Counted from the stretch's first letter, positions 17,722 to 63,613 are shown. The stretch: DNA of 64,000 bases from Octopus sinensis (GCF_006345805.1 NC_043019.1:4959360-5023359); one strand, 5' to 3'. Numbers and translations are program-made. Notes: a model not told the origin generated them from the letters alone.

Positions 17722-18046
17722 ATCATCATCATTTAACGTCCGCTTTCCATGCTAGCATGGGTTGGACGGTTCAACTGGGGTCTGGGGAGCCCGAAAGCTG
17801 CACCAGTCCAGTCAGATCTGGCAGTGTTTCTACAGCTGGATGCCCTTCCTAACACCAACCACTCCGAGAGTGTAGTGGGTGCTTTTATGTGCCACCGACA
17901 CAGGTGCCAGACGAGGCTGGCAAACGGCCACGCTCGGATGGTGTTTTTTATGTGCCACCGACACAGGTGCCAGACGAGGCTGGCAGACGGCCACGCTCGG
18001 ATGGTGTTTTTATGTGCCACCGACACAGGTGCCAGACGAGGCTGGC
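17722..18046 (-). mobile_element. SINE family C with internal roughly 60-bp repeats
   Basis: (CAT)n end plus repeated gccaccgacacaggtgccagacgaggc units. Confidence 0.8.
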
Positions 18047-18999
18047 GTGCACACACACACACACATACATGCAGATGTGGTCTCAAGTTCAGTTCCATAG
18101 TACAGCACCTCGGGCAACTATAACCTTGGGCCAACCAAAGCCTTGTGTGTGCATTTGGTAGACAGAAACTGAAAGAAGCCCATTGAAGATATATATATGC
18201 ATATATTTATGTGTGTGTCTGTGTTTGTACCCCCACTATTGCTTGACAATATTGACTATTGCTGGTGTGTTTATATCCCCAAAACTTAGTGGTTCAGCAA
18301 AAGAGCCCAATAGAATAAGTACTAGGCTTACAAAGAATAAGTCCTGGGGTCGATTTCTTCAATTAAAACCCTTTAAGGTGGTGCTCCAGCTTGGCTGCAG
18401 CCAAATGACTGAAACAACTAAAAGAAAAAGAAAATTCTAATACCACAACAAATTGTTTGGTAACTTAAAAACACAAATGATTTATTTTATTATATTTAAC
18501 GAAGACAGTTTTTCACCTGAAGATGTAAAATCCTTAAAAATGTTTTAGCCCAAAGGCTTCGGCCATGCTGGGGCACCACTGCTGAAAAGAAAGCTTTCCT
18601 ATCTGCGTGGGAGTCGAACCCACATCCCTTTGTTCATGCAACTAAGTGTACTACTGTTACACCAGCAAATCAGCCTGTAACTTAAATTCTGCATAATTTT
18701 GAAGGATTTCTTGCATTTTGCATTAATGCAGACATGAAAGTAATTTATTTATTATTAAATATAATAATATAAATTATTTACATGTTTTAAGCTACGAAAC
18801 AATTTGTCATGATACTAGAATTTTCTTATTGTTAAATAAAATTCCATGAAACTATTTCTCTGTCATTTATAACTTTATGCATATATATATAGTATATATA
18901 TTCTATGTTTTGTAGAATGATACATTAAGGAGCATTTTTTTTATGAGTACTGCCAGATTAGTTGAATCCATATATTGTGACTTAGATTTATATATATAC

Positions 19000-21463: not shown

Positions 21464-21686
21464 ATATATAGTTTATATAAGTTATATAAGTTTCATCAGA
21501 ATCGGTTGAAAGCCGTGGTCAGAGTGAGGGTACAAGCAAACAGACACACAGAAACACGCACAGACAAACTGCCATTATATAGAGAGAGATAACAGATATA
21601 CATACAAATAAATATATATATATATATATCATCATCGTCGTCGTGATGATATATATATATATATTTATTTGTATGTATATCTGTTA

Positions 21687-22073
21687 TCTCTCTCTATATA
21701 AATGGCAGTTTGTCTGTGCGTGTTTCTGTGTGTCTGTTTGCTTGTACCCTCACTCTGACCACGGCTTTCAACCGATTCTGATGAAACTTGACACACACAT
21801 AGCCCAATGTCATAATTCAAAACTAACGCAGCGAAAATTTTGAAAAGTTCCCCCAGTTCTGAAAAAAATCGATAAATTCGACATGGGGTCGAGAATCAAA
21901 AAAAATAAACCACAGACTGTCTAGGGGACGCAACTCAACCTTTTTTTACTCTCAAAAAAAAATTTACCATCATTTTTTTTCCATTTTTTTGCTATTTTTT
22001 GGCTATAACTCTCTAAAAATGCTTTATAGTTATTTCCCTTACAAACCTGAGCAACGCCGGGCGATACTGCTAG
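21687..22073 (+). mobile_element. Non-autonomous Helitron-like element, family 3, with an inverted partial copy of its 5' end at about 21485-21590
   Basis: TC start, subterminal gcaacgccgggcgatactgc, CTAG|T end. Confidence 0.75.
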
Positions 22074-27468: not shown

Positions 27469-28113
27469 TTAACCCTTTTGTTACTGCATTTATTTTGAGA
27501 TGCTCTCTTTTACTCTTTTACTTGTTTCAGTCATTTGACTGCGGCCATGCTGGAGCACCGCCTTTAGTCGAGCAAATCGACCCTGGGACTTATTCTTTGT
27601 AAGCCCAGTACTTATTCTATCGGTCTCTTTTGCCGAACCGCTAAGTGACGGGGATGTAAACACACCAGCATCGGTTGTCAAGCAATGCTAGGGGGACAAA
27701 CACAGACACACAAACACACACACACACACACACATATATATACATATACATATATACGATGGGCTTCTTTCAGTTTCCGTCTACCAAATCCACTCACAAG
27801 GCATTGGTTGGCCTGGGGCTATAGCAGAAGACACTTGCCCAACATGCCACACAGTGGGACTGAACCCGGAACCATGTGGTTGGTAAGCAAGCTACTTACC
27901 ACACAGCCACTCCTGCGCCTATGTGTTTCTTTCAATTAATTTTGGATATAACAAAGAATTTAGTAAAATAACTTAGTTATCATTCAGCTAGTGTTAGGAA
28001 CATAAATTGTAACTAAGGTTTGGTGGAAGATTTTAATTCAGAACTTCTGAAAACAAGACATTTGTACTCAGAGCCAGAGCTGGTTTCAGCCGGGTTGGTA
28101 ACGAAAGGGTTAA
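27469..28113. mobile_element. piggyBac-type MITE interrupted by SINE A
   Basis: TTAA|CCCTTT ... AAAGGG|TTAA; related copies at about 10190-10449, 31069-31299, 46225-46949, 54509-54737. Confidence 0.82.
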
Positions 28114-28631: not shown

Positions 28632-28753
28632 GACTATATTGTCAAGCGCCTGCAGCAAGAAAATGATCAGATAACTGAAGACGAACGGCTTATCCAACAA
28701 TATAGGGAAGACACTCTGAAGAAAAAAAACCAAATTGAAGAATTAAAGACTTC
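28632..28753 (+). CDS. VPS11: VPS11 exon: DYIVKRLQQENDQITEDERLIQQYREDTLKKKNQIEELKT(S)
   Basis: gaag acceptor, gtaagt donor, phase 0/2; coiled coil preceding the RING. Confidence 0.96.
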
Positions 28754-28831
28754 GTAAGTTCCATTTGCTTTGCTTTTTCTTTTTTCTTTTTACCTTCTGT
28801 TTCATCTCCCTCTGATTTGCAAATTAACAAA

Positions 28832-30310
28832 GGCACGTAAAAAGCACCATCCGACCGTGGCCGTTTGCCAGCCTCGCCTGGCCTCCATGCCAGTGGCACG
28901 TAAAAAGCACCATCCAATCGTGGCCGTTTGCCAGCCTCGCCTGGCCTCCATGCCAGTGGCACGTAAAAAGCACCATCCGATCGTGGCCGTTTGCCAGCCT
29001 CGCCTGGCCTCCATGCCAGTGGCACGTAAAAAGCACCATCCAATCGTGGCCGTTTGCCAGCCTCGCCTGGCCTCCATGCCAGTGGCACGTAAAAAGCACC
29101 ATCCGATCGTGGCCGTTTGCCAGCCTCGCCTGGCCTCCATGCCAGTGGCACGTAAAAAGCACCATCCAATCGTGGCCGTTTGCCAGCCTCGCCTGGCCTC
29201 CATGCAGTGGCACGTAAAAAGCACCATCCGATCGTGGCCGTTTGCCAGCCTCGCCTGGCCTCCATGCCAGTGGCACGTAAAAAGCACCATCCGATCGTGG
29301 CCGTTTGCCAGCCTCGCCTGGCCTCCATGCCAGTGGCACGTAAAAAGCACCATCCAATCGTGGCCGTTTGCCAGCCTCGTGTGGCACGTAAAAAGCACCA
29401 TCCGATCGTGGCCGTTTGCCAGCCTCGCCTGGCCTCCATGCCAGTGGCACGTAAAAAGCACCATCCGATCGTGGCCGTTTGCCAGCCTCGCCTGGCCTCC
29501 ATGCCAGTGGCACGTAAAAAGCACCATCCGATCGTGGCCGTTTGCCAGCCTCGCCTGGCCTCCATGCCAGTGGCACGTAAAAAGCACCATCCAATCGTGG
29601 CCGTTTGCCAGCCTCGCCTGGCCTCCATGCCAGTGGCACGTAAAAAGCACCATCCAATCGTGGCCGTTTGCCAGCCTCGCCTGGCCTCCATGCCAGTGGC
29701 ACGTAAAAAGCACCATCCGATCGTGCCGTTTGCCAGCCTCGCCTGGCCTCCATGCCAGTGGCACGTAAAAAGCACCATCCAATTGTGCCGTTTGCCAGCT
29801 CGCCTGGCCTCCATGCCAGTGGCACGTAAAAAGCACCATCCAACCGTGGCCGTTTGCCAGCCTCGCCTGGCCTCCATGCCAGTGGCACGTAAAAAGCACC
29901 ATCCAATCGTGGCCGTTTGCCAGCCTCGTGTGGCACGTAAAAAGCACCATCCGATCGTGGCCGTTGCCATCCTCACCTGGCCTCCGTTTTGGTGGCACGT
30001 AAAAAGCACCATCTGATCGTGGCCGTTTGCCAGCTCCGTCTGGCACCTGTGCAGGTGGCACGTAAAAAGCACCATCTGATTGTAGCCGTTTGCCAGCCTC
30101 GTCTGGCGCCTGTACCGGTGGCACGTAAAAGGCACCCACTACACACATGGAGAGGTTGGCATTAGGAAGGGCATCCAGCCATAGAAACATTGCCAGATCA
30201 GACTGGGCCTGGTGCAGCCTTCTGGCTTCCCAGACCCCAGTTGAACCGTCCAACCCATGCCAGTATGGAAAGCGGATGCTAAACGACGATGATGATGATG
30301 ATGATGATGA
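28832..30310 (+). repeat. 63-bp minisatellite (about 21 copies, to about 30130) expanded inside a SINE-C element ending in (GAT)n
   Basis: Unit ggcacgtaaaaagcaccatccgatcgtggccgtttgccagcctcgcctggcctccatgccagt. Confidence 0.95.
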
Positions 30311-30879
30311 AAACCATTGAAACCATCCCAAAGATGATATCAGAGTTCAACATAGCCCTGCAGCTCACTAGTTCCGTGTCAGACCATCCTACCCATGGAA
30401 ACATATGATGATAGTAGTGGCAGCAGCAGTGCCGTCATCATCCTGAAAGATTATCCCCACCTCGCTCTCTCTCTCTGTCTCTCAATTGGCACAAAGAAAA
30501 TCCAGAAATATATACCACAATTTCTCACCTGAATTTAGTGCTTGGTTGTCAAAAATCAAGCCTCTTTCTTATATTTTCATTTTATTTCTCTTCCATCTTG
30601 TAAGAAATTCTTCAAAAATTGGTTCATCTGTTAAACAGTCTTCTTGTAATGAAGTATTGTATTACCTATGTAAATCAGATACCACCCCCCCTTTCTGTCC
30701 TTTTTTTAATAGTCTTTAGCAAGGATATACTGCACGTTAGCATTTGTGGGATTACTGTTCTGATACAAATTGCTAGAAACAACTGAAAATACTATTCTTA
30801 TAATGGCCATTAATGAAGGCCTGTCTTTAGTCATAAAGTCATATGCCTTGTTTAACCTGCTTAATTTCCAATTTTCCAG

Positions 30880-30978
30880 CGCAAAGATCTTCCAAGCCCC
30901 TAAATGCAGTATTTGTAACCATCCTTTGGAAATCCCTTCGGTACATTTTCTCTGTGAACCTCACTCTTACCATCAACA
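30880..30978 (+). CDS. VPS11: VPS11 exon, RING-H2 first half: AKIFQAPKCSICNHPLEIPSVHFLCEPHSYHQ(H)
   Basis: ttccag acceptor, gtaagt donor, phase 2/2. Confidence 0.97.
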
Positions 30979-32869
30979 GTAAGTAACACAGAATTTATTA
31001 TTTGCTGTATTTACATAAAAAAAGAAACTGTGTGAATCTTGTGGTCTCATATCTTGTATGTAACATACTTAACCCTTTACTGTTCAAATATTTGGGCAAT
31101 ATCAGGGCCCAAATATTCTATCCTTTTTACAATAAAACCAGCCAGGTCTGGCTTCTCATACCTACCCTACAATGTCATTCTAAAAATAAACAATCACATC
31201 TTTGAAATCTCAAAGCTACAAGATAATGTGTGATTAATTCAAAACAATGTGAATAAATATGCATTACACTTGACAATAGTTTGTATGTTAAAGGGTTAAA
31301 ATAAGAAACTCTGGCAAAACTGTGGCTTTCAACGGTTTGAGTACTCACCTGGAAAGCACCTGGTAACATCGTTCGATACAAAGTTGAATAAAGGAACTAA
31401 TGTCAGTCATTAACCATCCAAGTTTAAATTTTCATTTCCAACATGTACCATGTTCACATCATTTACATGGTAAATGTTTGTGGCAAAGGCATGAATGCTA
31501 CATTATTGACTCTCAATACCTATTTCTTTACTACCCCCAAGGGGCTAAACACAGAGGGGACAAACAAGGACAGACAAACAGATTAAGTCGATTACATCGA
31601 TCTCAGTGCGTAACTGGTACTTAATTTATTGACCACGAAATGATGAAAGGCAAAGTCGACCTCGGCGGAATTTGAACTCAGTACGTAATGGCAGACGAAA
31701 TACCGCTAAGCATTTCACCTGGCGTGCTAACGATTCTACCAGCTCGCTGCCTTAATATCATATGTACCGTGCAATAATATAAGTGTTAAAATACCAGAAA
31801 TAGATTAGATTAATTTATTTTCAAGATCAATATCAAAATTTGCAAAAAACAAATGTGTCAGTGGTTTCCAACCAGAGATTCAGAGACAGTGGCTAAAGAT
31901 GTGGTGAGGTTTATTCTGGAGTTTATTTTATCTCTGTTGGGACAAAACAAGAATTGTCATGGGGCTTAAGCATAAGAAAAAAGAATGATGAGCTCACAAA
32001 AATGTTGGACACCACTTATGAAGTTCACTTATTGGTTAACCCTCTGGCATTTCATCTAGCCATATCCAGTCTAAATACTCTACCTGTTTTATGTTTAAAA
32101 AAATGATACGGCCAGTTTGAATTCTATAGGGTTAAGTCAGTCATAATATCTCGATTCCAGAAGGTAGAAAGGCAAATTTGACCGTGACAAGATTTCAAAA
32201 TGCAAAAGACATAACAAAATGCATAAGGAATTTTGTTGATGCTGTACCATGTTTCTAATGGAGGCAAAAGGCCTGAAATTGGTGCGAGGTGTTTCACCAT
32301 CGTCTGGTTGAGCTTCCTCGGACACTTTTAACCTACACACATCATCACGCACTTTGGTCTTGCATTGGTCGAGGGAAGTCTTCAGGGGAGGCATCCAGTG
32401 TCTCTGCTGAATTGATGTCTGTTGTGTCCTGATGACCTGCTTCAGTACAGCCACACTTTGGCTTCTGTAGCAGTAAGTCATTTTCCAACTCTTGTTTAGC
32501 TTGCTGGCAATGTCCCACAAAGTGCAAACGCCCTTACCCTATAATGGTGAAGATAGACACATTTAATTTCATAGAAAGAAACTGCAAGGAAGCCCATCTT
32601 TTTATATATGTCTTTGTGTATGTTGTATGAGCATTTTCACATTAACACCACTTGGACAGTCGTGATGCTACATAAATAGTCCAGTTATTTGGAAGGCCAA
32701 CATACAAAAGTGTCAGAGTATCCTACTTGAAAACAAGAGTTGCCATCAGGAAGGGCATCTAGTTGTGGCAATACTGGCCTCTAGAACCTTTCTTCAACTC
32801 ATGCATGGGTTGTAAAAACAATATATATATATATATATATAGACATAATCAAAATTTTATATAAATACA

Positions 32870-33629: not shown

Positions 33630-33683
33630 CTGTTTTGAATGTTATGGTGAAAATGAATGCCCTGTTTGTATGCAAGAAAACAG
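33630..33683 (+). CDS. VPS11: VPS11 exon, RING-H2 second half: CFECYGENECPVCMQEN(R)
   Basis: tactag acceptor, gtaaga donor, phase 2/2. Confidence 0.96.
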
Positions 33684-33809
33684 GTAAGATCTTTATTTAT
33701 TTTATCTTATCATTTAAGACAAGATACCTTCTTTTGTATGTCACTTTCTTCCTTTTCCCTTGCTCATCAACCAAACAGCTTTACCATAGAGGACGTGCTC
33801 CCTTTTCCT

Positions 33810-34745
33810 GTAAGTTACAAGACTTTAGGGCTGCAGCAATAAATATAGGCATAATGATAGGTAGGTTTAGTGAGTTTGTGGAAATGCTGGAACAGAGACA
33901 AGTGGTTGTGTGTTGTGTGCAAGAGGAAAGATGGAAGGAATCCTCAATCACACTCTTCACAGGCAAGAGACAGCAGTACAAATTTTTCTGGCTGAGTAAT
34001 AGAGACAAGGCATACTCTTACCTGAGAAATAGCTAAAGTAATTGAGGTAGTCAGTGTTTCTAATTATAGGCAACTTAATAACAACATTCATCTTGGCAGA
34101 AGTCATTAAGTGGATATTAAAAATGACTCCCCACTGCAGACAGGACAGAAGAACCACTTCTGTGAGACCCTGACAGTAACCTCATTATTGTGGCCAGCAA
34201 CATCAATGGATGTTGGCCAAAACAGTGATGATTTCAGCAGTATACATGGAGGCTATGGTTTATGGTTCAAGAAATGAGGAGGGTGTATGATACCTGGAGT
34301 TCTGTGATGCAAGTGATCTAACAATTTGCAAGACATTTTAGGAAGCCAAATAAACACCCACCCGTCTGGCGAGCACCAGTTGGACAGGTTACACTCTCAA
34401 CAGTAGTGCTATTGTAAATACCAAAACCTTTCTTGAAAAAGAATATATTATGCAACATAGATTAGTGACCATTGACTGAAATGAAAGACAACATGGAAAA
34501 GGAAAATATGGAAACTAAAAGAGCTTGCGATTAAGAATAGATTTAGAGAAATTCTAACTGACCCTAAGATGGCAGAGGGGAAGATTTAGATATCTGTAGC
34601 ATAGATGACACCTGAAAATTCCTATGAAGTCACCTACTTAGGGTTATTGAAGCAAAGACCCAGCCCAGCCAGAACTAACATGGTGGTGGAATGATGATGT
34701 AGGTGGTGGATGGTAAAGGCTAAGTGAGAGGCTTGGGAAACCTAG
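33810..34745 (+). mobile_element. Decayed RTE-clade LINE, AP-endonuclease region
   Basis: INIGIMIGR...VCCVQEERWK...YKFFW and GGYG..RNEEG...LEFCDA motifs. Confidence 0.7.
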
Positions 34746-35589
34746 AAGGTAACAACCTTCATCCACTCACTCCTGGTCTCTCTGACCCACTTGTATCTAC
34801 CCACCTTGTACCTTGAAGGTCCACCTAATCACTCCCACCCCTCTTCTTAAATGTGAGTAGTCATGTGACTCCCCTACTGAAAGAAACCTGTTCTGCAGTG
34901 ACCCCATTTCTCATATTTTTACCTCCTTCCCATAAAACAGCCCCCTTCAAGGTTCGTTGTCTGTCTTACAAGCTACATGACAACGTCACCAGTGCTGGTA
35001 CCTTGAAAATAGCTCCCAGTGCACATTGTGATGTGGTTGGCCTTAGGAAAGGTATTCAACCATAGAAACCATGCCAAAGCAGATATCAAAGCACAATCCA
35101 ACCATTGGGCCCATCACATCCTATCCAACCCTGCCAACATCATCATCATAAATGCTGGCATGGGGCTAGATGGTTTGACAGTTGCTGAGAAGCCCAGGGA
35201 GCTGCACCAGGCTCCATTCTCTATTCTGGCATGGTTTCTACAGCTAGATACCCATCCTAACACCAACCACTTTACAGTGTGTAATGGGTGCTTTTTTTTT
35301 CCGTGGGACCAACACCAATGCTTTTCATGTGGCACTATATCAGTACTTTTTACATCAATTTTGTTGATGATGATGATTTTTTTTTTAAAGACAATAGGAT
35401 GGAGTTTGCAGGGAATTTGACTGCTATTTTTAGTAGCCATTCAGATTTTTTATAGAACCTTTCTCATGGCTAAACCTAATTTCAAGTATGTTGTGTACAT
35501 ATGATTGTTGCATAAACTGTTGTAGCTGACTATTATATATATATATATATTTATATAAATGTAATATGTAACAATTATTCGGTAGCCAT

Positions 35590-35650
35590 GATAAAACTCC
35601 GAGTTTCGGATGCCGAGGTGGAAATCCATGCCACCATCTCTTCAGTTATC
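35590..35650 (-). ncRNA. Minimal type I hammerhead ribozyme motif
   Basis: Minus: GATAA-CTGAAGA-GATG GTGG..CCAC..CATC c-GAAA-CTCGGAG-TT-TTATC. Confidence 0.75.
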
Positions 35651-35713
35651 CGGCCATCGGAAACATGCTATGAAAATGCTATGATTTTTTTCATGGCATT
35701 TTTCCGATGGCTG

Positions 35714-35774
35714 GATAACTGAAGAGATGGCAGCATGGATTTCCACCTCGGCATCCGAAACTCGGAGTTTTATC
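35714..35774 (+). ncRNA. Minimal type I hammerhead ribozyme motif
   Basis: GATAA-CTGAAGA-GATG...CATC c-GAAA-CTCGGAG-TT-TTATC; 5-bp stem I, near-palindromic stem III, GUU triplet. Confidence 0.75.
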
Positions 35775-36270
35775 ATGGCTACCGAATAATTGTCACATAT
35801 TACATTTACAGATAAATTCCTCTATTTACATAATATCAAGGTCTCTTTCTCTCTTCTGTTGTCTTACTATTTTTATCAATATATATATATATTATATTTC
35901 TTTATCTTTTATTAAACTTTTAATACTTTTGATATTTAAAAAAAAAAATGTAAATAAATAAATAAATAAAAGAATATATAAATATAAAAATATACATACA
36001 TACATATAGATATATTTGTATATATATATAAAATTTATAAGTTTAAATTATTTAAATAATTTTTTATTTTTTACTTTTATATTTTTAAATTAATTTTATG
36101 TATTGGCTTATGTTTTTCACTGTTTGATTTGCCTAATAGTGATTTTATCTCTAATATAATATAATATAATATATTTATACTATAAAATTGGATTTAATTC
36201 TAAATCTAATTTTTCCCTGTAAGTTTGGATTTATTCCCTAATATTATTATAATATATATATATATATAAT

Positions 36271-36796
36271 AATTTAATAAATAAAACATATGCATACATA
36301 CATGTACATACCTACATTTATATGTATATATACATGCATATATGGGTACAGGACACCCCAAAAAAAAAACGTATAACACAACAGGAAACGGAAACATAAA
36401 AACAAAACAAGGAAAGGGACTTTTTTTAACAACGAAAAAAACAGAGTACAAGACAACAACACAAGGAACACTCCCCTTCTTCAGCTGCCCCTGTTTTGAC
36501 TCAATGCGTGTTTCGAAGGTAAGGGCAATTTCGAAACACGCATGGAGTCAAAACAGGGACAGCTGAAGAATGGGAATGTTCCTTCTGTTGTTTGTCTTGT
36601 ACTCTGTTTTTTCGTTGTTAAAAAGAGTCCGTTTCCTTGTTTGGTTTTATGTTTTCGTTTCTCGTTGTGTTCTACGTTTATTTGTGGTGTCCTGTACTCA
36701 TATATATATATATATATATATATATGCATGTATATATACATATAGATGTAGGTATGTACATATATGTATGTATGCATATGTTTTATTTATTAAATT
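36271..36796. repeat. Fold-back element (about 245-bp arms, about 11-nt spacer near 36518-36529)
   Basis: Arms are reverse complements, e.g. cgtgtttcgaa / ttcgaaacacg at the centre. Confidence 0.92.
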
Positions 36797-37016
36797 GTTA
36801 TTATATGATCAAACGCCACGCGTCGTCTTCTTCCAAGTAAGTTTTATATATATATATATATATATTCGGTTAAGTAATTGAGATTCTGGTGAATTCTAAA
36901 GAATTCACATGAATATGGTCCTTAATTAGGATGCACCGGAAATCTATATGGTGTTAACCATACGACAAGTGGGGTGATTACAAATAGGAAAAAAGCAACA
37001 AGAATGGATTAAAATC

Positions 37017-37100
37017 TCGGTACGATCGTTTCGTACGAGGACATCTTTAATAAGCTACAAAAAATGCAGTGAATACAGATGGCTCGTACTCGTCAGCCGA
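37017..37100 (-). ncRNA. Canonical minimal type I hammerhead ribozyme (antisense arm)
   Basis: Reverse complement of 37169-37252. Confidence 0.85.
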
Positions 37101-37168
37101 AAAAACATCAGAGAATTCCCAAACATGTATCTACCCCTTTTGATGTTTGGGAATTCTCTGATGTTTTT

Positions 37169-37252
37169 TCGGCTGACGAGTACGAGCCATCTGTATTCAC
37201 TGCATTTTTTGTAGCTTATTAAAGATGTCCTCGTACGAAACGATCGTACCGA
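37169..37252 (+). ncRNA. Canonical minimal type I hammerhead ribozyme
   Basis: TCGG-CTGACGA-GTACGAG[loop]CTCGTAC-GAAA-CGATCG-TA-CCGA; all core nucleotides present, 7-bp stem II, palindromic stem III, GUA triplet. Confidence 0.88.
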
Positions 37253-37280
37253 GATTTTAATCCATTCTTGTTGCTTTTTT

Positions 37281-37319
<39 letters not shown>

Positions 37320-37331
37320 ATTTCTCTGCAG

Positions 37332-37398
37332 GAAAGTGATGGAAGTGATCCGAGCCCAAGAACAGAACAAGGATATTCATGAACATTTCCACAATGAG
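37332..37398 (+). CDS. VPS11: VPS11 exon: (R)KVMEVIRAQEQNKDIHEHFHNE
   Basis: ctgcag acceptor, gtacag donor, phase 2/0; human RKVMDMIRAQEQKRDLHDQF. Confidence 0.96.
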
Positions 37399-37762
37399 GT
37401 ACAGTAGTTTTTTTTTCTTCTCCCCTTGCTTTCCTTCAATTCCTTATTCTCTAAATATGACTTCTGTCAGTTCTGTAGTTACAAAGATCAAGTACCAGGC
37501 TTCAAAGACATAAGCACTGAGGTCAATTTGTTCAGCTGAACCCTTGAGGACAGTGCTCCAGCATGGCTACAGTCCTATGACTGAAACAAGCAAAAGATAT
37601 ATGGGTGCAGGAGTGGCTGTGTACTAAGTAGCTTGCTAACCAACCACATGGTTCCGGGTTCAGTCCCACTGCGTGGCACCATGGACTAGTGTCTTCTATA
37701 GCCTCAGACTGATCAAGGCCTTGTGAGTGGATTCGGTGGACGGAAACTGAAAGAAGCCCGTC

Positions 37763-37795
<33 letters not shown>

Positions 37796-38371
37796 TGCAA
37801 GAGTGGCTGTGTGGTAAGCAGCTTGCTTACCAACCACATGGTTCCGGGTTCAGTCCCACTGCGTGGCACCTTGGGCAAGTGTCTTCTACTATAGCCTCGG
37901 GCCAACCAAAGCCTTGTGAGTGGATTTGGTAGACGGAAACTGAAAGAAGCATATATGTATGTGTCTGTGTTTGTCCCCCTTGCATTGCTTGACAACTGAT
38001 GCTGGTGTGTTTATGTCCCCCGTCATTTAGCGGTTCGGCAAAAAGAGACCGATAGAATAAGTACTGGGCTTACAAAGAATAAGTCCCAGGGTCGATTAGC
38101 TCGACTAAAGGTGGTGCTCCAGCATTGCCACAGTCAAATGACTCAAAGAAGTAAAAGAGTATATATGTGTGTGTCACCCAACCATCATTTGACAACCGAT
38201 GTTGGTGTGTTTACGTCCCCTGTAACTTAGCAGTTCAGCAAAAGAGGCCGATAGAATAAGTACTAGGCTTGCAAAGAACAAGTCCTGGAGTCGGTTTGTT
38301 CGACTAAAGGCAGTGTTTCCAGCATGGCCACAGTCAAATGACTGAAACAAATAAAAGAATAAAAACATGTA

Positions 38372-38742: not shown

Positions 38743-39994
38743 CAGGGGTTGGACAAAATAATGGAAACACCTTAAAATTTCAAACAAATTTATTTTAATA
38801 TGGGGCAGGACTGTTTGAATTCTACGAGGTATAGACTCGTACAAAGTTTGAATTGTTCCCAAAGGAATTTTTGTCCATTCTTCAGCTAAAACAGTCTCCA
38901 GTTCTTGTAGAGATGATGATGGTGGAGGATATCGACTCCTTACTTGCTTTTCTTAAATGTATCATAAATGTTCAACAATATTGAGTTCTGGGGACTGTGG
39001 TGGCCAGATAAGATGTTCAACTTCACTAGAATGTTCCTCGTGCCGTTCAGTAACAACTTTAGCTGTGTGAATTGGTGCAATATCATCCTGAAAGATAGCA
39101 TTTCCCCCCAGAAACAGTTCTGCAACCATAGGATGAATTTGATCAGATAAAATGCTTAAATAGTCTTGACTATTAATTCTGCCATGAAGAGAGACCATTG
39201 GGCCAGCGGATTTCCAAGATATAGCCCCCTAGATCATCACAGATCCTCCCCGCTGTTCAATAGTTGGAAGAAGGCAGTCTGGGTCAAATGCTTCTTTTGG
39301 CTCTCTTCACATTTATACTCGGCCGGTGGTTGGAAAAAAAAGTAAAGGATGACTAATCCAAGAAAATAACATTCTTCCACTTCTCTAGGGACCAATTCTG
39401 TAGGTTTTTACTCCACTCTAAACGCTTTGCACTGTTTTTGAAAGTAGTGGTTTTCTGATTGCAGCCCTCCTGTGAAATCCAGCTTTGTGCAGCTCCTGGC
39501 AAAGTGAACAGTTTTTGTGGAAACTGGGTTCTGGAGGTGGTCATTAAGCTCTGCAGTAATTTTGGGAGTTACACTTTTCTGATCCTTTCTAACAATTTGT
39601 GTAAGAGTCCAACAGTCCCTATCTGAAAGTTTTGGTTTTCTTCTGGAGTTCTCTTTCAACGAGGAGAGTTTTTCCCTCTTTCTCAAAGGCTGCCATTACT
39701 TTCGAGACAGTACTTCTTGATACACCAAACATTTCAGCTGTTTCCATCATGCTAACACTTGCCATACAAGCACCAAGAATTTGACCTCTTTGAAAGTCCG
39801 ACAGATCTGTCATTTTAATGAATTTTAATTTCCTTTCTCTGGTGATATCTGCAAAGAAAGAGCAATTTTAGCAAAGCATATTAAGCAACACTAATAATAA
39901 ATCAAAAAACATGAAAATAAACAAGCTTTTCATGGTTTTATAGATATTTCAAAATTATGATGCTAGGTATTTCCTTTATTTTGTCCAACCCTTG
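38743..39994 (-). mobile_element. Decayed near-full-length Tc1-family transposon
   Basis: TIRs TA|CAGGGGTTGGACAAAATA and TTTTGTCCAACCCTTG; fragmented transposase with LSDFQRGQILG, VSRSTVSKV, WKNVIFLD, AIFQDDIAPIH, WPPQSPELNIVEHL. Confidence 0.92.
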
Positions 39995-40754: not shown

Positions 40755-41255
40755 CATCATCATCATCATCATTTAACGTCCGTTTTCCATGCTAGCATGG
40801 GTTGGACGGTTCAACTGGGGTCTGAGAAGCCAGAAGGCTGCATCAGGCCCAGTCTGATCTGGCAGTGTTTCCTAACGCCAACCACTCCGTGAGTGTAGTG
40901 GGTGCTTTTTACGTGCCACCCGCACAGGTGCCAGACAGAGCTGGCAAACGGCCACGAACGGACGGTGCTTTTACGTGTCACCGGCACGGGGGCCAGGCGA
41001 GGCTGGCAACGGACACGAACGGATGGTGCTTTTACGTGCCACCAACACGGGGGCCAGACAGAGCTGGCAAACGGCCACGAAACGGATGGTGCTTTTACGT
41101 GTCACCGGCACGGGGGCCAGGCGAGGCTGGCAACGGACATGAACGGATGGTGCTTTTACATGCCACCGACACGGGGGCCAGACAGGGCTGGCAAACGGCC
41201 ACGAACGGATGGTGCTTTTACGTGTCACCGGCACGGGGGCCAGACAGAGCTGGCA
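40755..41255 (-). mobile_element. SINE family C with about 5 diverged internal 60-bp repeats
   Basis: (CAT)n end and repeated ggtgcttttacgtg units. Confidence 0.82.
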
Positions 41256-41363
41256 TATTTATGGGGTAATAGAACTTAATATATGTATGTGTGAGTCTGT
41301 ATATATGTGTTTACCTGAAACATGCAACTGGTTCAATCATTATTTTTGTCTCTCTTATTATAG

Positions 41364-41429
41364 CTTGACCGTGTCCAGGATGGATTCTCTTTGATTGCTG
41401 ATTACTTTGGCCGTGGTATTTTTAGTAAG
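41364..41429 (+). CDS. VPS11: VPS11 exon: LDRVQDGFSLIADYFGRGIFSK
   Basis: tatag acceptor, gtttgt donor; conserved VPS11 C-terminal ADYFGRG motif. Confidence 0.95.
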
Positions 41430-42117
41430 GTTTGTAGTACTCACCTTTCTCAATAATTTCACCTTTGTCCATTTGTACACATTATTCCCTGCTGACATGA
41501 CCAAGTACACTTCTTTGGGCTCAAAGTTGTGTTCTTGAACAAGACACTTTATTTCACGTTGTTCCAGTTCACTCAGCTGTAGAATTGAGTTGCGGCAACA
41601 CTGGTGCCGAGCCCTATCGGTGTTTGCCTTTCCTTTGGAAACATCAGTGGTATGGAAGAGGGGAGGCTGGTATGCATGGGCAACTTCTAGTTTTCTAGAA
41701 AACAACCGCTAGCCTCCTGAAGAAGGTCTTTACCCTTTAGTGTAACTGAATGCTAAAGGGTTTGTTCTTGGGTGTCTGTAGCAGAGTTCATTCCGTTGCA
41801 AGCATTCAGACCATATCTGAGGATAACTCAAAGTGCTGTGGCTTCTTGTCTTTTATGCACAAGTTCCAGAGATCCTGAAAAACTCACTGGCACAGCCCTT
41901 ACGTCTCTTGAGTAAGACATAAAAAAGAAAAAGAAATTACAATATAGGCACAGGAGTGGCTGTGTGGTAAGTAGCTTGCTAACCAACCACATGGTTCCGG
42001 GTTCAGTCCCACTGCGTGGCATCTTGGGCAAGTGTCTTCTGCTATAGCCCTGGTCCGACCAATGCCTTGTGAGTGGATTTGGTAGATGGAAACTGAAAGA
42101 AGCCCGTCGTATATATG

Positions 42118-43363: not shown

Positions 43364-46224
43364 GTTTACATAGTTAATCATTTAACATACACATATACAC
43401 TATTAGTAAATAATATATCAAATAATCGGAAACACAATAGGTCTGTACATTGTAATAAATCCAACAGAAATTTGAAGCTTGTTTTTTTTCTTTAGAATTG
43501 TGTTTTATAAATGACTAGCAGTATCGCCTGGCGTTGCTCGGGTTTGTAAGGGAAATAACTATATAAGCATTTTTAGAGAGTTACTTCCCTTATATAATAG
43601 CAAAAAAATGCATTAAAAATGGGAAAAAATGATGGTAAATTTTTTTTTAAATCGTTGACTCATCGTAGACATTTTTAGATAGTTACTTCCCTTATATAAT
43701 AGCGAAAAAAATGCAATAAAAATGGGATGGTAAATTTTTTTTTAAATCGTAGACTCATTGTAGATGCGCGCTAATACCCAGAAGGGCTCGATATGAATCA
43801 CGACCATAAGATACCCGGTTTTGGTTAAACTGCACTGCAAAATGTGGGAGTAGTTAGGAATCTAAATCGTAGGAGACAGACAGACACACAACCTCACTTT
43901 ACAATAAAGAAGATATAGTAATAACAATTGTCAATACTTTCACTTTTTTTTTTTTACTGTATTTCTAAACATGGTGTACCATAATTTGAAACATGTGGTA
44001 ATTAATAGAAAGCACAATGTATACGACATTAAATCTGAATGTAATTAACAATCAATGAAGATAATTTATGACTATTGACATAGTGTTAATAACTGAAACA
44101 GTACAATTACTGAACATTACGATTCATGTAACCATATTTCTTGATAATAAATCTATCATGTGGTTGATTATCAGTAAATTGAGTTTATTGATACTGTGAC
44201 ATAGATAGAAATAATAAAGTATACTAAGGGCATATATATATGTGTATATATATATATATCTAATATAGGATACAATTTTTCGAAAAAAATTCTCTCAATG
44301 GTCAGCATATTAAAAAAAATACCTTTAAAAGTTAAATTTATGTTTATATGTGTGTGTGTGTATATATATGTGTGTGATTTCGGAAAGAGTAGAATATAAA
44401 AGCTTTCACTTTGATATTAATAACTATGGAAGACTGATGGGAATATAATCTGCATGGACTTCGAGGGCTAGGTTGCTATTTAGTTAGATAATTTCGAAGT
44501 TAGTTATAGGTTTACTAATTAAATTTATTTACCGATACTGTTTTCGTACATAGGGTAAATGTGCTCCTTTGTTGTAATTTAATTAATGTTAGTTTATATT
44601 CCTTCCTAGAATTAAGATTGTATGGATGTGGTTATATCTGAGGTCTGTTTGTTCCCAAACAACACATATTTTAGTGCTGTTGACACTACCAGATTGAATG
44701 GTATTGCCCAGGTGTCAAAACCATAGTGATATCCATGAGGCAGCTGATGATGGGGGTATGTTGGGTTGTTGGTATGGCTGTTATTGTATGTGCAGAATAG
44801 TTTTATAAGACTATTTGATTATATATATAATGTTTCCCTTTTAGTTTGTGTATAACAAACCAAATGTGAATATCTGTATATAAGGATATATGCAGAGAAA
44901 TTAGTGTATATATATATATATGCAAGACTTGCACTAAAAAAATAATCCCAACTAGTTTTTCAATATGCCTAGAATTATTAGCACTCTGGGCAAAATGCTT
45001 AGTGGCATTTCATCTGTCTCCATGCTCTGAGCTCAAATTCCGTTGAGATTGACTTTGCCTTTCATCCTTCCAGGGTCAATAAAATAAAATAAGTACCAGC
45101 TGACCACTGGGATTGATGTAATCAACCTACCACCCACTTCCCCTGAAATTGCTGGCATTATGCCAAAACGTGAAGCATTATTATTATTATTATTATTATT
45201 ATTATAAGGTGGCAAGCTGGCAGAATCATTAGCACACCTGGGAAAATACTTAGTGTCATTTGTTCTCTCTTTATATGCTGAATTCAAATTCCACCAAGGT
45301 CAACTTTGCTTTCATCCTTTCAGGGTCAATAAAGTACCAGTTGAGCACTGGAGTCAATGTAATAGACTAGTCCCACCCCCATCCCAAATTTCTGGCCTTG
45401 TACCTTTAGTAGAAAGGATTACTATTACGATACAAAATTCGTTCATAGTTTAGGTGGTATACTCTTTTACTTGTTTCAGTCATTTGACTGCGGCCATGCT
45501 GGAGCACCGCCTTTAATCGAGCAACTTGACCCCGGGGCTTATTCTTTTGTAAGCCCAGTACTTATTCTATCGATCTCTTTTGCCAAACCGCTAAGTAACG
45601 GGGACATAAACACACCAGCATCGGTTGTCAAGCAATGCTAGGGGGACAAACACAGACACACAAACAAACACACATACATACATATATAAATATATATATG
45701 TATATGTACGACAGGCTTCTTTCAGTTTCCGTCTACCAAATCCACTCACAAGGCTTTGGTCGGCCCGAGGCTATAGCAGAAGACACTTGCCCAAGATGCC
45801 ACGCAGCGGGACTGAACCCGGAACCATGTGGTTGGTTAGCAAGCTACTTACCACACAACTACTCCTGCGCCTATTTGAGTATAAATCTGAATCTTTTAGC
45901 CATATATGGGTGGTGTAAATGCTGAAGGGTGAAAAGATGTTAAAGGGTTGAACAATGAAGAGGGAGAATGAAAAGTGAATCCATTTTTTTCAACGTATTC
46001 TGAAAAAATATGTATAAATTATGTTTCGTTTTTTAGTGTGTATTTATGTATGTATATATAACATAAACCAGAAGGCATGTAAATAATTAGGATATATAAT
46101 TAGTGTTACTGTAAAATAAACCCAGCATTATTTTTGAACAGGATTAAATATGTGTGTGTGTGTGTGTGTGTGTCTTGTTGTGCAGAATCGATTCATAGCT
46201 CTGCTGCGTATGTAAAGAATGTAA

Positions 46225-53186: not shown

Positions 53187-53775
53187 GTTAACACAATGTT
53201 TCAGCTGATATACCTTCCAGCCTTCTTCAGGTGTCTTGGAGAAATTTCGAACCTGGGTTCTCATTCCAAAGGTATTTTCAATGTTGTTGTTATTATTATT
53301 ATTGTTCAGGTCACTGCTTGGAACCGAACTATGGCATGGTGGTTAAGAGCATGGGCTACTAACCCCAAGATTCCAAGTTCGGTTCCAAGCAGTGACCTGA
53401 ACAATAATAATAATATCGAAAATGTCGCTGGTAAACTGGGAAACAAAATCGAGATGTTTCATTTCCCTCGGCGAATATTTTTCAAGCTTAGACCGTAAGG
53501 GGAATGTAAGGGGTTTATGGCCCATGTTGATGGTAAACTGTCTCCCTTCAAGGTAATGACGGAAGTGTTTTACTGCCAGGTAAATATACTCTTTTACTTG
53601 TTTCAGTCATTTGACTGCGGCCATGCTGGAGCACCGCCTTTAGTCGAGCAAATCGACCCCGGGACTTATTCTTTGTAAGCCCAGTACTTATTCTATCGGT
53701 CTCTTTTTCTGAACCACTAAGTGACGGGGATGTAAACACACCAGCATCGGTTGTCAAGCAATGCTAGGGGGACAA

Positions 53776-53959: not shown

Positions 53960-55030
53960 CACAGCCGCTCCTGCGCCAATAATTCATGTCCAAAAGTGCT
54001 ATAGTGGGTCTCGGCAGGTTGCAGCTGCCGAGATAAAAATGCCAAAGGTTGCATATGTTCTTGATGGAACTGTTGTAACACAGCACCTACAGCTGTATTT
54101 GATGCGTCCACCATAAGCAAAAGCTTTGTGCCATAAACAGGGTGCACTAACAGTGAAGATTGTGCAAGTTCATGCTTTACCATTTGAAAGGCATCCATTT
54201 AGGAAGATGAAAGTGAAATAGCTTCATTTTTGTTCTTACGATTCTTTAAAAGCTCAGTAAGAGGAGCAAGATGCTCCGCACAGTGAGGGATAAATCGTCT
54301 CTAAAAGTTCAATAATCCCAGGAAATGATGAAGCTGCCGGAGTGAGGCAAGAGGAGGAAGTTCTTGGATAGCCCAGACTTTTCAGGAAGAGGCCTAATAC
54401 CCACTTCATCGATGAGGTGGCCAAGGAAATCAAGTGAAGAGGATCCAAAAACACATTTAGCTGGATTTATTCTAACTCTGAATTGGGTCAGGTGCTGGAA
54501 AAGCAGCTTTAACCCTTTAGCATTTAAACCGGCCATATCCGGCCAAAAGTATTCTGCCTGTTTTATGTCCAAACTGGCCAGATCTGGTCTCTCACACCAG
54601 CCCTACAATATCGTTTTAAAAATTAACAGCTACCTCATCAAAATCTCATAGCTACAAGATAATGCCTGATTAGTTCAAAACAATGTGGATAAAAAAGGAT
54701 TAATTTTGGTAGAATAATGCGAACACTAAAGGGTTAAATGTTGTACGTGCTCGTCCGCACTAGAACTGGTAATCAACAGATCATCGATGTAAGCATAAAC
54801 GAAGACCAGCCCACGAATGACCTGGAATGTACTGGCAGCATTCTGTAACCCAAACAGCATTGTCAGAAATTCAAAAACACCAAATGGTGTTGTCACAGCA
54901 GTTTTAGGGATGTATTCTGGGTGCACAGGAATCTGATGATAGGCCTGAACCAGATGGAGCTTAGAGAACACTGTACACCCCTGTAAGGATGAAGCAAAGT
55001 CCTGGAAATGAGGGATCGAATAACGATCAT
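53960..55030 (-). mobile_element. Ty3/Gypsy pol relic (RT and RNase H) interrupted by a piggyBac-type MITE
   Basis: [71 protein letters not shown]. Confidence 0.92.
54509..54737. mobile_element. piggyBac-type MITE with TTAA target duplication
   Basis: TTAA|CCCTTT...AAAGGG|TTAA; removing it restores the Gypsy frame EHVQHLKLLFQH. Confidence 0.9.
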
Positions 55031-56025
55031 GCATATCCTTAACATAGTTTTTAGGGAGATTCAGCATGACACAGAGTGTGAACAAAGCTGGCCTTTTAAA
55101 GTACAGGTGTCACTCATTTTTGCCAGCTGAGTGGACTGGTGCAACGTAAATAAAATGTCTTGCTCAAGGACACAATGTGCTACAAGGAATTGAACTGATG
55201 ACTTAGTAACCATGAGCTGAATCCCCTAACCACTAAGCCACACACCTTCCCAATACAATCTCATATTAACCCCCAACAACCAATCCTTTCTTCTAACATC
55301 AACCCTCTGCGATTCCCAAACCAACCACATTTTTTGCCAAACCACCACCTCATTATTCTCATCAATCATGGAAGGGCCACGTCATTGTCTTTATATAGGC
55401 TTGGTTGAGATAAGATGGGGGTCATCAAAGCTAATTATCTTAGATATACTTTAACAAAGGTAGGGCCTTCAGCTTTTCCTCAATGGCACGATGGTTATGG
55501 GACCCACCAATTAAATGTCTTTTCAGCATGATATCCAGAACTGGTTGTATCTGTTGATTTCCAGGTAAAATTACTGTTAAACGTGTTAATTCCCGATTAA
55601 AGTGTATGGAACAAGTAAAGAACCCAGTTTCAGATAAAAAAGAAAAAGAAAATGATTATGTTAAAAAAAAAGAAAAAAAAACTAGTTCTTTAGGTCTATT
55701 GTTGAATTGATGAATAATTCTAAATCAGCTGATAGGGTTGTGATGACATTTGTTGCTGGCTGACACAATATCATGTAATCTGAGAATTTTTCACTCAGGT
55801 TATCAGCATGCTTCTGAATATCATAGAAATATTTTTTTCATGAGAGCACTTTTGGGAAGGTCTGGTAGATATATATATATATAAACTCAGAAAACGCAGG
55901 AAAAGAAAATATTGCATATATTTCTTCAAGGACACCACTATACGTTCCCACTATACACAGGCACACAGACGTATGCATACATAAAACCACTCATATAAAA
56001 TTAACTATAAATGTTCTGACTGAAA

Positions 56026-59878: not shown

Positions 59879-59911
<33 letters not shown>

Positions 59912-63582: not shown

Positions 63583-63613
<31 letters not shown>

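What the first reader, a model, noticed from the sequence alone, without database searches (positions are those of the whole stretch)
37169..37331. Textbook hammerhead about 80 nt upstream of a VPS11 splice acceptor, on the sense strand
Seen: perfect core (CUGACGA, GAAA, GUA), 7-bp stem II with a long loop, palindromic CGAUCG stem III. Predicted cleavage is after 37248, and the acceptor AG ends at 37331 with only (TA)n and a very short pyrimidine tract in between. Inference: cleavage, or the 140-bp hairpin formed with the left arm, could affect branch-point use and inclusion of the post-RING exon.
Basis: partly seen in the sequence, partly recalled or inferred. Interest (0 to 1): 0.72.

Follow-up and report, generated by a model that had tools for sequence, protein, structure and literature searches.

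The report
Transposon-borne hammerhead ribozyme in VPS11 intron
A genuine-looking hammerhead ribozyme motif does sit 83 nt upstream of a VPS11 exon, but it is one half of a perfect 302-bp palindromic insertion next to a (TA)n repeat. It looks like the ribozymes carried by Penelope-like retrotransposons, so it is most likely inert mobile-element debris, not a splicing switch.

Summary
On the + strand at 37167-37254 there is a complete type I hammerhead: 6-bp helix I, CUGACGA, 7-bp helix II with a 43-nt loop, GAAA, palindromic ACGAUCGU helix III, and cleavage after A37248. It lies 83 nt upstream of the acceptor of a real VPS11 exon (37332-37398).

Rfam Hammerhead_1 is the only hit in a narrow search, but it scores below the family threshold (21.4 against 34 bits). 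No motif this good appeared in 300 simulated windows.

The motif is the right arm of a perfect palindrome at 36984-37285, with 143-nt arms and a 16-nt loop. An identical hammerhead therefore lies on the minus strand. The insert lies between two pure (TA)n tracts in a 3.65-kb, repeat-rich intron.

Four features match published descriptions of hammerheads and insertions of Penelope-like retroelements: long helix II, short palindromic helix III, head-to-head truncated copies and a (TA)n target.

In the VPS11 pre-mRNA the ribozyme should be silent. The hairpin (-260 kcal/mol) outcompetes the ribozyme fold (-23 kcal/mol), and no second sense copy exists for the favoured dimer.

I found no other copy and no Penelope-like coding sequence, so the Penelope-like origin is inferred. 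This is a new member of a known kind and of low interest.

The parts
33631..33683 (+). VPS11 exon (CFECYGENECPVCMQENR, second half of the RING). Its donor AG|GTAAGA starts the intron that holds the element.
33684..37331 (+). VPS11 intron of 3,648 nt, rich in microsatellites and palindromic repeats. It contains the element.
36845..36865 (.). Left (TA)10.5 tract, 100% pure
36866..36983 (.). 118-nt unique segment between the left (TA)n and the left arm. It may be a one-sided extension ('tail') of the insertion or older intron sequence. Undecided.
36984..37126 (-). Left arm of the palindrome: a minus-strand copy of the element's 3' end
37015..37102 (-). Second, identical hammerhead on the minus strand (CUGACGA at 37096-37090; predicted cleavage after 37021)
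37127..37142 (.). 16-nt unpaired centre of the palindrome (GTATCTACCCCTTTTG)
37143..37285 (+). Right arm of the palindrome: a plus-strand copy of the element's 3' end
37167..37254 (+). Type I hammerhead motif. Helix I 37167-72/37249-54; core 37173-79; helix II 37180-86/37230-36; GAAA 37237-40; helix III 37240-47; predicted cleavage 37248|37249.
37255..37285 (+). Element tail after helix I. It holds UUAAU (37257-61), the only yUnAy in the AG-free zone, and a pyrimidine-rich run.
37283..37317 (.). Right (TA)17.5 tract, 100% pure. It abuts the right end of the palindrome.
37318..37331 (+). GGATTTCTCTGCAG: short pyrimidine tract and the acceptor AG
37332..37398 (+). 67-nt VPS11 exon (KVMEVIRAQEQNKDIHEHFHNE), start of the VPS11_C domain. 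Skipping it would shift the reading frame.

Best explanation
The hammerhead is cargo of a mobile element, not a VPS11 device.

The 302-bp palindrome is best read as two head-to-head, severely 5'-truncated copies of the 3' end of a retroelement that carries a hammerhead, of the Penelope-like kind. It went in as one event at a (TA)n microsatellite, 46 nt upstream of the acceptor. The identical arms and the single 16-nt centre suggest the copy was made by fold-back (snap-back) copying, or by priming from both target strands. This step is inferred.

In its parent element a ribozyme of this kind acts, if at all, as a two-copy double hammerhead formed through the palindromic helix III.

In the VPS11 pre-mRNA it is expected to be silent. 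The left arm is transcribed first and zips with the ribozyme strand into a 143-bp duplex, and there is no second sense copy to form a dimer. The intron is then spliced with the insert looped out as a hairpin. Any effect on the gene would come from that hairpin (access to the branch point, RNA editing, small RNAs), not from self-cleavage.
For: Shown here:
- Complete hammerhead core and three helices. Rfam Hammerhead_1 is the sole, full-length hit in the narrow search.
- Below chance expectation in simulations.
- Perfect 143-nt inverted arms with a 16-nt centre, and an identical ribozyme on the minus strand.
- Pure (TA)n abutting the right end, and another 118 nt from the left end. Removing 36866-37282 leaves one seamless (TA)n.
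- Hairpin -259.7 against ribozyme fold -22.8 kcal/mol. The monomer minimum-energy fold (-27.2) is an inactive alternative.
- Two sense copies fold into a double hammerhead with an 8-bp intermolecular helix III (-60.4 against 2 x -27.2). Monomer helix III is +2.4.

From the literature:
- Hammerheads of Penelope-like elements have a long helix II (7-8 bp) and a small palindromic helix III. They occur mostly as solitary truncated copies, and also as pairs 100-700 bp apart on opposite strands. Single motifs showed no detectable cleavage in vitro (PMC4209133).
- Insertions of these elements are highly 5'-truncated. They often have an inverted truncated copy adjacent, which forms inverted repeats. 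They can carry an extension at one end only, have the ribozyme near the 3' end, and prefer (TA)n targets in some clades (PMC8557442).
- The element's protein cuts and extends both target strands in vitro (PMC11167929).
Against: - No second copy of the element was found in the window, in 20 kb of a related species or in the public collections I could scan. Repeat status is therefore inferred from architecture alone.
- No Penelope-like reverse transcriptase or GIY-YIG endonuclease reading frame is in the window.
- The unpaired nucleotide between A9 and G10.1, which is typical of these ribozymes, is absent.
- The one-sided extension would be 118 nt, against the 30-40 nt described.
- At least five unrelated palindromes in the window show that palindromy here need not come from this kind of element.
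- The Rfam score is below the family threshold.
- Silence of the ribozyme rests on thermodynamic prediction, not on an assay.
Confidence: 0.65

Rival explanations
1. Palindromic miniature DNA transposon (foldback or MITE type). It would be inserted at a TA with a TA target duplication and would happen to carry, or have captured, a hammerhead sequence.
For: The ends can be read as TA[GGAAAAAAGC...GCTTTTTTCC]TA. The whole element is one long terminal inverted repeat. The window holds several other palindromic elements of similar size with 11-21-nt centres, and a Tc1-like transposase remnant.
Against: TA is self-complementary and sits inside a (TA)n tract, so the apparent duplication carries no information. 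The termini resemble no known transposase-binding end that I can name. None of the papers I read mentions hammerheads in DNA transposons. The hammerhead shape fits the retroelement type.
Confidence: 0.13
2. A solitary hammerhead repeat (solo retrozyme, SINE-like element or Penelope-like tail) inserted first. It was later turned into a palindrome by a local DNA-level inverted duplication, the same process that made the other palindromes in this window.
For: The palindrome at 21488-21789 carries microsatellites in both arms, which implies duplication of ordinary genomic DNA. The palindrome at 15041-15720 is even larger. The left arm continues into 118 nt of unique sequence that the right arm lacks.
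Against: This does not change what the ribozyme is. Identical arms, a short centre and (TA)n at the outer ends are equally what a single retroelement insertion event gives (PMC8557442).
Confidence: 0.12
3. One reading: the ribozyme, or its competition with the hairpin, regulates branch-point use and inclusion of the 67-nt VPS11 exon.
For: Sense orientation. The cleavage site is 83 nt from the acceptor. The only consensus branch-point match in the AG-free zone (UUAAU, 37257-61) lies 12 nt downstream of the cleavage site, inside the hairpin. The pyrimidine tract at the acceptor is short.
Against: The hairpin outcompetes the ribozyme fold by more than 230 kcal/mol. The ribozyme is of the dimer type with no sense partner. 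The arms are 100% identical, as a recent insertion would give. Cleavage upstream of the branch point would mostly destroy the transcript of a housekeeping gene rather than tune it. There is no evidence of conservation.
Confidence: 0.05
4. Artefact or chance: either the motif is a chance match, or the palindrome is an assembly error.
For: Genome-wide, a rate of 0.01 per 64 kb for weaker motifs would still give many chance hits. Rfam is below threshold. Near-perfect palindromes can arise from chimeric long reads.
Against: There were zero hits of this quality in 300 simulations. Features not used in my search also fit: the G10.1-C11.1 pair, palindromic helix III, and a double hammerhead as the dimer minimum-energy fold. 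The palindrome sits between unique flanks with correctly ordered VPS11 exons, and the centres of the different palindromes differ, so they are not adapter sequence.
Confidence: 0.05

Closest known systems
Hammerhead ribozymes of Penelope-like retroelements (Cervera & de la Pena 2014, PMC4209133; Lunse et al. 2016, cited in PMC6765202)
   Same: Type I topology. Full conserved core with the G10.1-C11.1 pair. Long helix II (7 bp). Helix III reduced to 2 bp plus a palindromic loop, so the active form is a double hammerhead. Found as a dispersed copy far from any reading frame. A pair of motifs on opposite strands about 75 nt apart, similar to the 100-700 bp pairs described. Variants with a small palindromic helix III were reported in flies, rotifers, shrimps and mosquitoes.
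   Different: It lacks the usual unpaired nucleotide between A9 and G10.1. Loop 2 is unusually long (43 nt, with inner stems). No link to a reverse-transcriptase/GIY-YIG element could be shown.
Insertion architecture of Penelope-like elements (Craig et al. 2021, PMC8557442; PMC11167929)
   Same: Extreme 5' truncation. An inverted truncated copy placed head-to-head, which forms an inverted repeat. The ribozyme lies near the 3' end. (TA)n is at the insertion site. An extra segment is present at one end only.
   Different: The two copies are truncated at exactly the same point, giving a perfect palindrome with a 16-nt centre. The one-sided segment is 118 nt, not 30-40. Among the clades said to prefer (TA)n, the Naiads lack canonical hammerheads.
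Animal non-LTR retrozymes and satellite hammerheads (newt, Schistosoma, axolotl, mussel; PMC7229834; bioRxiv 10.64898/2026.07.22.740005)
   Same: Type I hammerhead with a 2-bp helix III capped by a tetraloop, as described for invertebrate motifs. Non-coding. AT-rich unit. Thought to derive from Penelope-like elements.
   Different: Retrozymes are direct tandem repeats of 170-400 bp, with a 4-bp helix II and loop-loop contacts. Here there is no direct repeat and helix II is 7 bp. In the two Xenopus species analysed, the preprint reports retrozymes as depleted from introns.
Conserved intronic hammerheads of amniotes (HH9, HH10; de la Pena & Garcia-Robles 2010, cited in PMC7229834)
   Same: A hammerhead on the sense strand inside an intron of a protein-coding gene.
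   Different: Those are single-copy, ultraconserved and stable as monomers. This one matched none of those Rfam families, is of the dimer type, sits in a palindromic insert with identical arms, and has no demonstrated conservation.

Membership tests
Hammerhead ribozyme, type I (Rfam RF00163) | Conserved core: C3 U4 G5 A6 N7 G8 A9, G12 A13 A14, A15.1-U16.1 pair, and a non-G at position 17 | tested here: met
   CUGACGA 37173-79; GAA 37237-39; A37240 pairs with U37247; A37248
Hammerhead ribozyme, type I (Rfam RF00163) | Three helices around the core, with helix I open (5' and 3' ends in helix I) and a G10.1-C11.1 closing pair | tested here: met
   Helix I 6 bp, helix II 7 bp starting G-C, helix III 2 bp plus GAUC loop. 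Rfam aligns the full model 1-45.
Hammerhead ribozyme, type I (Rfam RF00163) | Score at or above Rfam's gathering threshold (34 bits) | tested here: not met
   21.4 bits, E = 0.0026, in a 103-nt search. Not reported in the whole-window or 901-nt searches. In the alignment, 47 nt sit in loop 2 where the model has 4.
Hammerhead ribozyme, type I (Rfam RF00163) | Compensatory changes in the helices among related copies | tested here: inconclusive
   The only related copy found is the identical inverted arm.
Hammerhead ribozyme, type I (Rfam RF00163) | Site-specific self-cleavage giving 2',3'-cyclic phosphate and 5'-OH ends | not testable with these tools
   Needs in vitro transcription or RNA end mapping.
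Dimer-type hammerhead of Penelope-like elements | Very short helix III with a palindromic sequence, so that two copies form an extended helix III | tested here: met
   ACGAUCGU is self-complementary. The monomer hairpin is +2.4 kcal/mol and the 8-bp duplex is -10.0. The minimum-energy fold of two copies is the double hammerhead, -60.4.
Dimer-type hammerhead of Penelope-like elements | Longer than usual helix II (6-8 bp) | tested here: met
   7 bp; criterion from PMC4209133
Dimer-type hammerhead of Penelope-like elements | Unpaired nucleotide between A9 and G10.1 | tested here: not met
   G37180 follows A37179 directly and pairs with C37236.
Dimer-type hammerhead of Penelope-like elements | Located in the terminal repeat of an element that encodes a reverse transcriptase plus a GIY-YIG endonuclease | tested here: inconclusive
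   No such reading frame is in the 64-kb window. The two reverse-transcriptase-bearing elements present look like LINE-type and LTR-type elements. Most published motifs are likewise solitary (PMC4209133). The source genome could not be searched.
Penelope-like element insertion | 5'-truncated copy with an adjacent inverted truncated copy; (TA)n target; extension at one end | tested here: inconclusive
   The head-to-head arms and (TA)n flanks are met. The one-sided segment is 118 nt, not 30-40. The same picture fits a TA-targeting palindromic DNA element.
Non-LTR retrozyme | Direct tandem repeats, each unit carrying a type I hammerhead | tested here: not met
   No direct repeat of the unit. The only other copy is inverted.
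Conserved intronic hammerheads (HH9/HH10) | Match to those Rfam families and conservation at the orthologous intron | tested here: not met
   No Rfam match. The orthologous intron of the related species in L001 lies beyond the DNA I could fetch.
Miniature inverted-repeat DNA transposon | Terminal inverted repeats, a target-site duplication and many copies with fixed ends | tested here: inconclusive
   Inverted repeats are met trivially. A TA duplication cannot be told apart from the palindrome or the (TA)n. Copy number is not testable.

The most novel reading that the evidence does not exclude
The insert has become part of the working 3' splice region of this VPS11 intron. It supplies the only consensus branch-point sequence (UUAAU, 37257-61) and a pyrimidine run inside the AG-free zone. 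Competition between the 143-bp hairpin and local folds, including the ribozyme fold, would then set how well the 67-nt exon is recognised. Alternatively, the perfect hairpin could be processed into small RNAs that silence the parent retroelement family, which would make a housekeeping-gene intron a source of transposon defence.
Probability: 0.05. Interest if true: 0.6.

Novelty: new member of a known kind. Interest (0 to 1): 0.22.

Why it matters
Mostly as a caution. A flawless hammerhead core next to a splice site is not evidence of ribozyme-controlled splicing, because animal genomes carry thousands of such motifs as cargo of Penelope-like elements and their derivatives.

This locus is a clean example of a ribozyme locked in a perfect hairpin, with an identical copy on the other strand. 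It could serve as a natural test of whether dimer-type hammerheads ever fire as single copies in a host transcript.

It is also a possible case of a transposon insertion that displaced, and perhaps replaced, the branch-point region of an essential gene. If the element is polymorphic, it is a ready-made presence/absence marker.

Tried and rejected
1. Rfam at gathering thresholds on the whole window, and at E<=10 on 901 nt, gave no hammerhead. The only hits were sub-threshold microRNA-family matches that merely reflect the long hairpin. I rejected the microRNA reading.

2. A second hammerhead-like motif lies in another palindrome: 35719-35769 on the + strand and 35645-35595 on the - strand. It has an extra C between helix II and GAAA, only a 3-4 bp helix II, and no Rfam hit even in a 96-nt search. 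I treat it as chance or a degenerate relic.

3. A compact motif at 53230-53195 on the - strand has a non-palindromic helix III and lies in a tRNA-like SINE. I treat it as chance.

4. Searches for other copies of the element all found nothing:
- BLAST of the element against the window.
- Exact and gapped pattern scans of the metagenome, prokaryotic genome and viral collections.
- Six-frame peptides of the element against the protein collection.

5. The orthologous intron could not be reached. VPS11 exon peptides found a 212-kb contig of a related species (ENA ERZ21867824; L001). Four exons are 75-84% identical at DNA level, but the fetched 20 kb ends before the relevant intron.

6. Same-genome contigs via a LINE reading frame from the window: not on record.

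7. Supplementary sequence files of the two key papers are not held. The Lunse et al. paper is not held.

8. The GTAAGT at 36837 as a donor of a short intron was rejected. There is no upstream acceptor or open frame, and the true upstream exon is 33631-33683.

9. The organism was not identified. The microsatellite-rich, SINE-rich sequence suggests an invertebrate with a large genome, but that is a guess.

Full report
**What is there**

The + strand between 37167 and 37254 reads UUUCGG-CUGACGA-GUACGAG-(43 nt)-CUCGUAC-GAAA-CGAUCG-UA-CCGAGA. My own descriptor scan of both strands found this motif with helix I of 6 bp, helix II of 7 bp and helix III of up to 4 bp. It found the identical motif on the minus strand at 37096..37021 (exact-match search).

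All positions that define a hammerhead core are present:
- C3 U4 G5 A6 C7 G8 A9.
- The G10.1-C11.1 pair.
- G12 A13 A14.
- The A15.1-U16.1 pair.
- A17, followed by C1.1 paired with G2.1.

The 43-nt loop of helix II folds into two further stems.

**Is it more than chance?**

I ran 300 first-order Markov simulations of the window and scanned both strands.
- The loosest version of my descriptor hit 0.31 times per window.
- The version with helix I >= 5 bp and helix II >= 6 bp hit 0.01 times per window.
- Nothing reached the observed 6 and 7 bp.

Rfam gave no hit at family thresholds for the whole window, nor at E <= 10 on 901 nt, where only sub-threshold microRNA-family hits to the long hairpin appeared. 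Given only 103 nt, the single hit in the whole library was Hammerhead_1 (type I). It covered exactly 37167-37254 and the complete model, at 21.4 bits against a threshold of 34, E = 0.0026. In that alignment 47 nt sit in loop 2 where the model has 4, which probably accounts for the shortfall. The formal Rfam membership test is not met, but the assignment to the type I hammerhead shape is sound.

**Gene context**

The exon at 37332-37398 encodes KVMEVIRAQEQNKDIHEHFHNE. I joined it to CFECYGENECPVCMQENR (33631-33683), to LDRVQDGFSLIADYFGRGIFSK (41365-41430) and to the RING exon at 30880-30982. The product matches Pfam VPS11_C at 62.5 bits against a cutoff of 25. Upstream exons match the PEP5/VPS11 clathrin-repeat family at 53.6 bits. 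So the gene is VPS11 on the + strand and the hammerhead is in sense.

The intron that holds it runs from 33684 to 37331 (3,648 nt). The GTAAGT at 36837 is not a donor. The acceptor AG is at 37330-31, 83 nt after the cleavage site.

**The motif is half of a palindrome**

Positions 36984-37126 and 37143-37285 are 100% complementary, giving 143-nt arms around a 16-nt centre. The right end abuts a pure (TA)17.5 at 37283-37317. A pure (TA)10.5 lies at 36845-36865, 118 nt beyond the left end. Removing 36866-37282 would leave one seamless (TA)n.

No other copy exists in the window. The window does hold at least five other, unrelated long near-perfect palindromes with 11-45-nt centres:
- 15041-15720
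- 21488-21789
- 35536-35828
- 36399-36648
- 53284-53422

Three of these, counting the hammerhead palindrome, lie in this one intron. Palindromic inserts are therefore a general feature of this genome region.

**Folding**

- Whole palindrome as RNA: a single hairpin at -259.7 kcal/mol.
- Ribozyme segment alone: a minimum at -27.2, in which core residues A6-A9 (ACGA) pair with the 3' strand of helix III (UCGU). This is an inactive fold.
- Ribozyme segment forced into the hammerhead fold: -22.8.
- Helix III as a monomer hairpin: +2.4. As an 8-bp duplex between two copies: -10.0.
- Two sense copies folded together: the minimum is the classical double hammerhead at -60.4, against -54.4 for two separate monomers.

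This is a dimer-type hammerhead. The pre-mRNA has one sense copy, preceded by its perfect complement.

**Comparison with what is known**

Cervera and de la Pena (PMC4209133) described hammerheads in the terminal repeats of Penelope-like retroelements:
- They occur in thousands of copies in many animal genomes.
- Helix II is longer than usual (7-8 bp) and G10.1-C11.1 is conserved.
- Helix III is tiny and palindromic.
- Most copies are solitary and presumed to be truncated elements. Some occur as pairs 100-700 bp apart on opposite strands.
- Single motifs showed no detectable cleavage, and dimers only weak cleavage.
- Variants with a small palindromic helix III were reported in flies, rotifers, shrimps and mosquitoes.

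Craig et al. (PMC8557442) describe the insertions of these elements:
- They are highly 5'-truncated.
- An inverted truncated copy is often adjacent, which forms inverted repeats.
- An extension can be present at one end only.
- The ribozyme lies near the 3' end.
- Some clades prefer (TA)n targets.

The anole element's protein cuts and extends both target strands, and its ribozyme is dispensable for insertion in vitro (PMC11167929). A review states that these ribozymes probably act as dimers (PMC6765202).

The locus matches this picture in ribozyme shape, orientation of the two copies, position near the 3' end and (TA)n flanks.

It departs in three ways:
- It lacks the unpaired nucleotide after A9.
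- The one-sided extra segment is 118 nt.
- Both copies are truncated at the same point. I take the last as a sign of fold-back copying in one event. That is an inference.

It is not a retrozyme in the strict sense, because there is no direct tandem repeat. It matches none of the conserved amniote intronic hammerhead families.

**Mechanism and rivals**

The best-supported reading is that this is a dead, non-coding fragment of a retroelement that carries a hammerhead. It inserted at a (TA)n 46 nt from the acceptor. For VPS11 the ribozyme is silent, and the insert is looped out as a 143-bp duplex.

What is shown:
- The motif, the palindrome and the flanks.
- The energy ranking of the folds.
- The dimer preference.

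What is inferred:
- The Penelope-like origin.
- The single insertion event.
- The silence of the ribozyme.

The rivals are:
- A TA-targeting palindromic DNA element.
- A solitary hammerhead repeat made palindromic later by a local inverted duplication.
- Chance or an assembly artefact.

The AG-free zone before the acceptor is 37254-37329, and its only yUnAy match (UUAAU, 37257-61) lies in the element tail, inside the hairpin. The insertion may therefore have changed which branch point is used. Nothing suggests that self-cleavage is involved.

**What could not be done**

I could not reach the source genome or the orthologous intron.
- Peptides from the element found nothing in the protein collection.
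- Pattern scans of three collections found nothing.
- A LINE reading frame from the window is not on record.
- The related-species contig found through a VPS11 exon (L001) ends before the intron.

Copy number, boundaries, covariation, polymorphism and expression all remain open. The steps that would settle them are listed under decisive next steps.

**Verdict**

It is a new member of a known kind and of low interest.

Noticed in passing
window 35536-35828: A second palindrome in the same VPS11 intron, with about 141-nt arms, 89% complementary, and an 11-nt centre. It abuts a (TA)12 on its left. Each arm carries a hammerhead-like string (CUGAAGA...CGAAA...GUU at 35719-35769 on + and 35645-35595 on -). 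That string has an extra C before GAAA and a weak helix II, and gets no Rfam hammerhead hit. It shows no sequence similarity to the main element.
   Followed up: partly
window 36399-36648: A third palindrome in the same intron. It has nested arms (63 nt at 92% and 42 nt at 93% complementarity) around a 12-nt centre. It contains CUGAAGA but no further hammerhead features.
   Followed up: no
window 15041-15720: A very large near-perfect palindrome. The arms are at least 277 nt and 99% complementary, and continue into the flanks with one TA indel. The centre is 15 nt. It has no hammerhead motif and its origin is unknown.
   Followed up: partly
window 21488-21789: A perfect palindrome whose arms include (GA)n and (TA)n microsatellites, around a CATCATCGTCGTCGTGATGATG centre. 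It looks like an inverted duplication of ordinary genomic DNA, not a transposon. This suggests a DNA-level process that makes palindromes in this genome.
   Followed up: no
window 1-2816, minus strand: A LINE-type retrotransposon with reverse transcriptase (Pfam RVT_1, 79.7 bits) and upstream reading frames, broken into several frames. No GIY-YIG domain was seen by eye, so it is probably not a Penelope-like element.
   Followed up: partly
window 54312-55109, minus strand: A reverse-transcriptase fragment with the motif YAYIDDLLI (Pfam RVT_1, 46.9 bits). It looks like an LTR-retrotransposon remnant.
   Followed up: partly
window 38962-39813, minus strand: A Tc1/mariner-like transposase remnant (helix-turn-helix plus DDE_3 domains), broken into several frames. 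It lies in the VPS11 intron downstream of the 67-nt exon.
   Followed up: partly
window 28690-30346; related arrays at 8398-9870, 17736-18206, 40826-41279: Long minisatellite-like tandem arrays that stay open in several reading frames (repeated peptide GWCFLRATGMEARRGWQTATI and frame variants). One of 1.6 kb lies inside a VPS11 intron.
   Followed up: no
window 37640-37700, 37795-37932, 4600-4723, 27800-27936, 41831-42000, 45700-45915, 59900-60120, 63600-63800 (approximate): Many copies of a SINE-like repeat containing GGTTCCGGGTTCAGTCCCACTGCGTGGCACC, often next to microsatellites, in both orientations. I did not test whether it is tRNA-derived.
   Followed up: no
window 53195-53230, minus strand: A compact minimal-hammerhead-like string (helix I 5 bp, an extra A after the core, helix II 6 bp with two G-U pairs). 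Positions 15.2/16.2 are not palindromic. It lies beside a B-box-like GGTTCGAA and is probably a chance match.
   Followed up: partly
window 36837: A consensus-looking donor (CAA|GTAAGT) just before the left (TA)n. It has no matching upstream exon, and it could mislead exon prediction into calling a 495-nt intron.
   Followed up: yes
L001 (ENA ERZ21867824, contig ctg118753l, 126971-147216): A related species' VPS11 locus. Four exons align at 75-84% DNA identity, with much shorter spacing between some exons than in the window. The introns here are inflated by repeats.
   Followed up: partly
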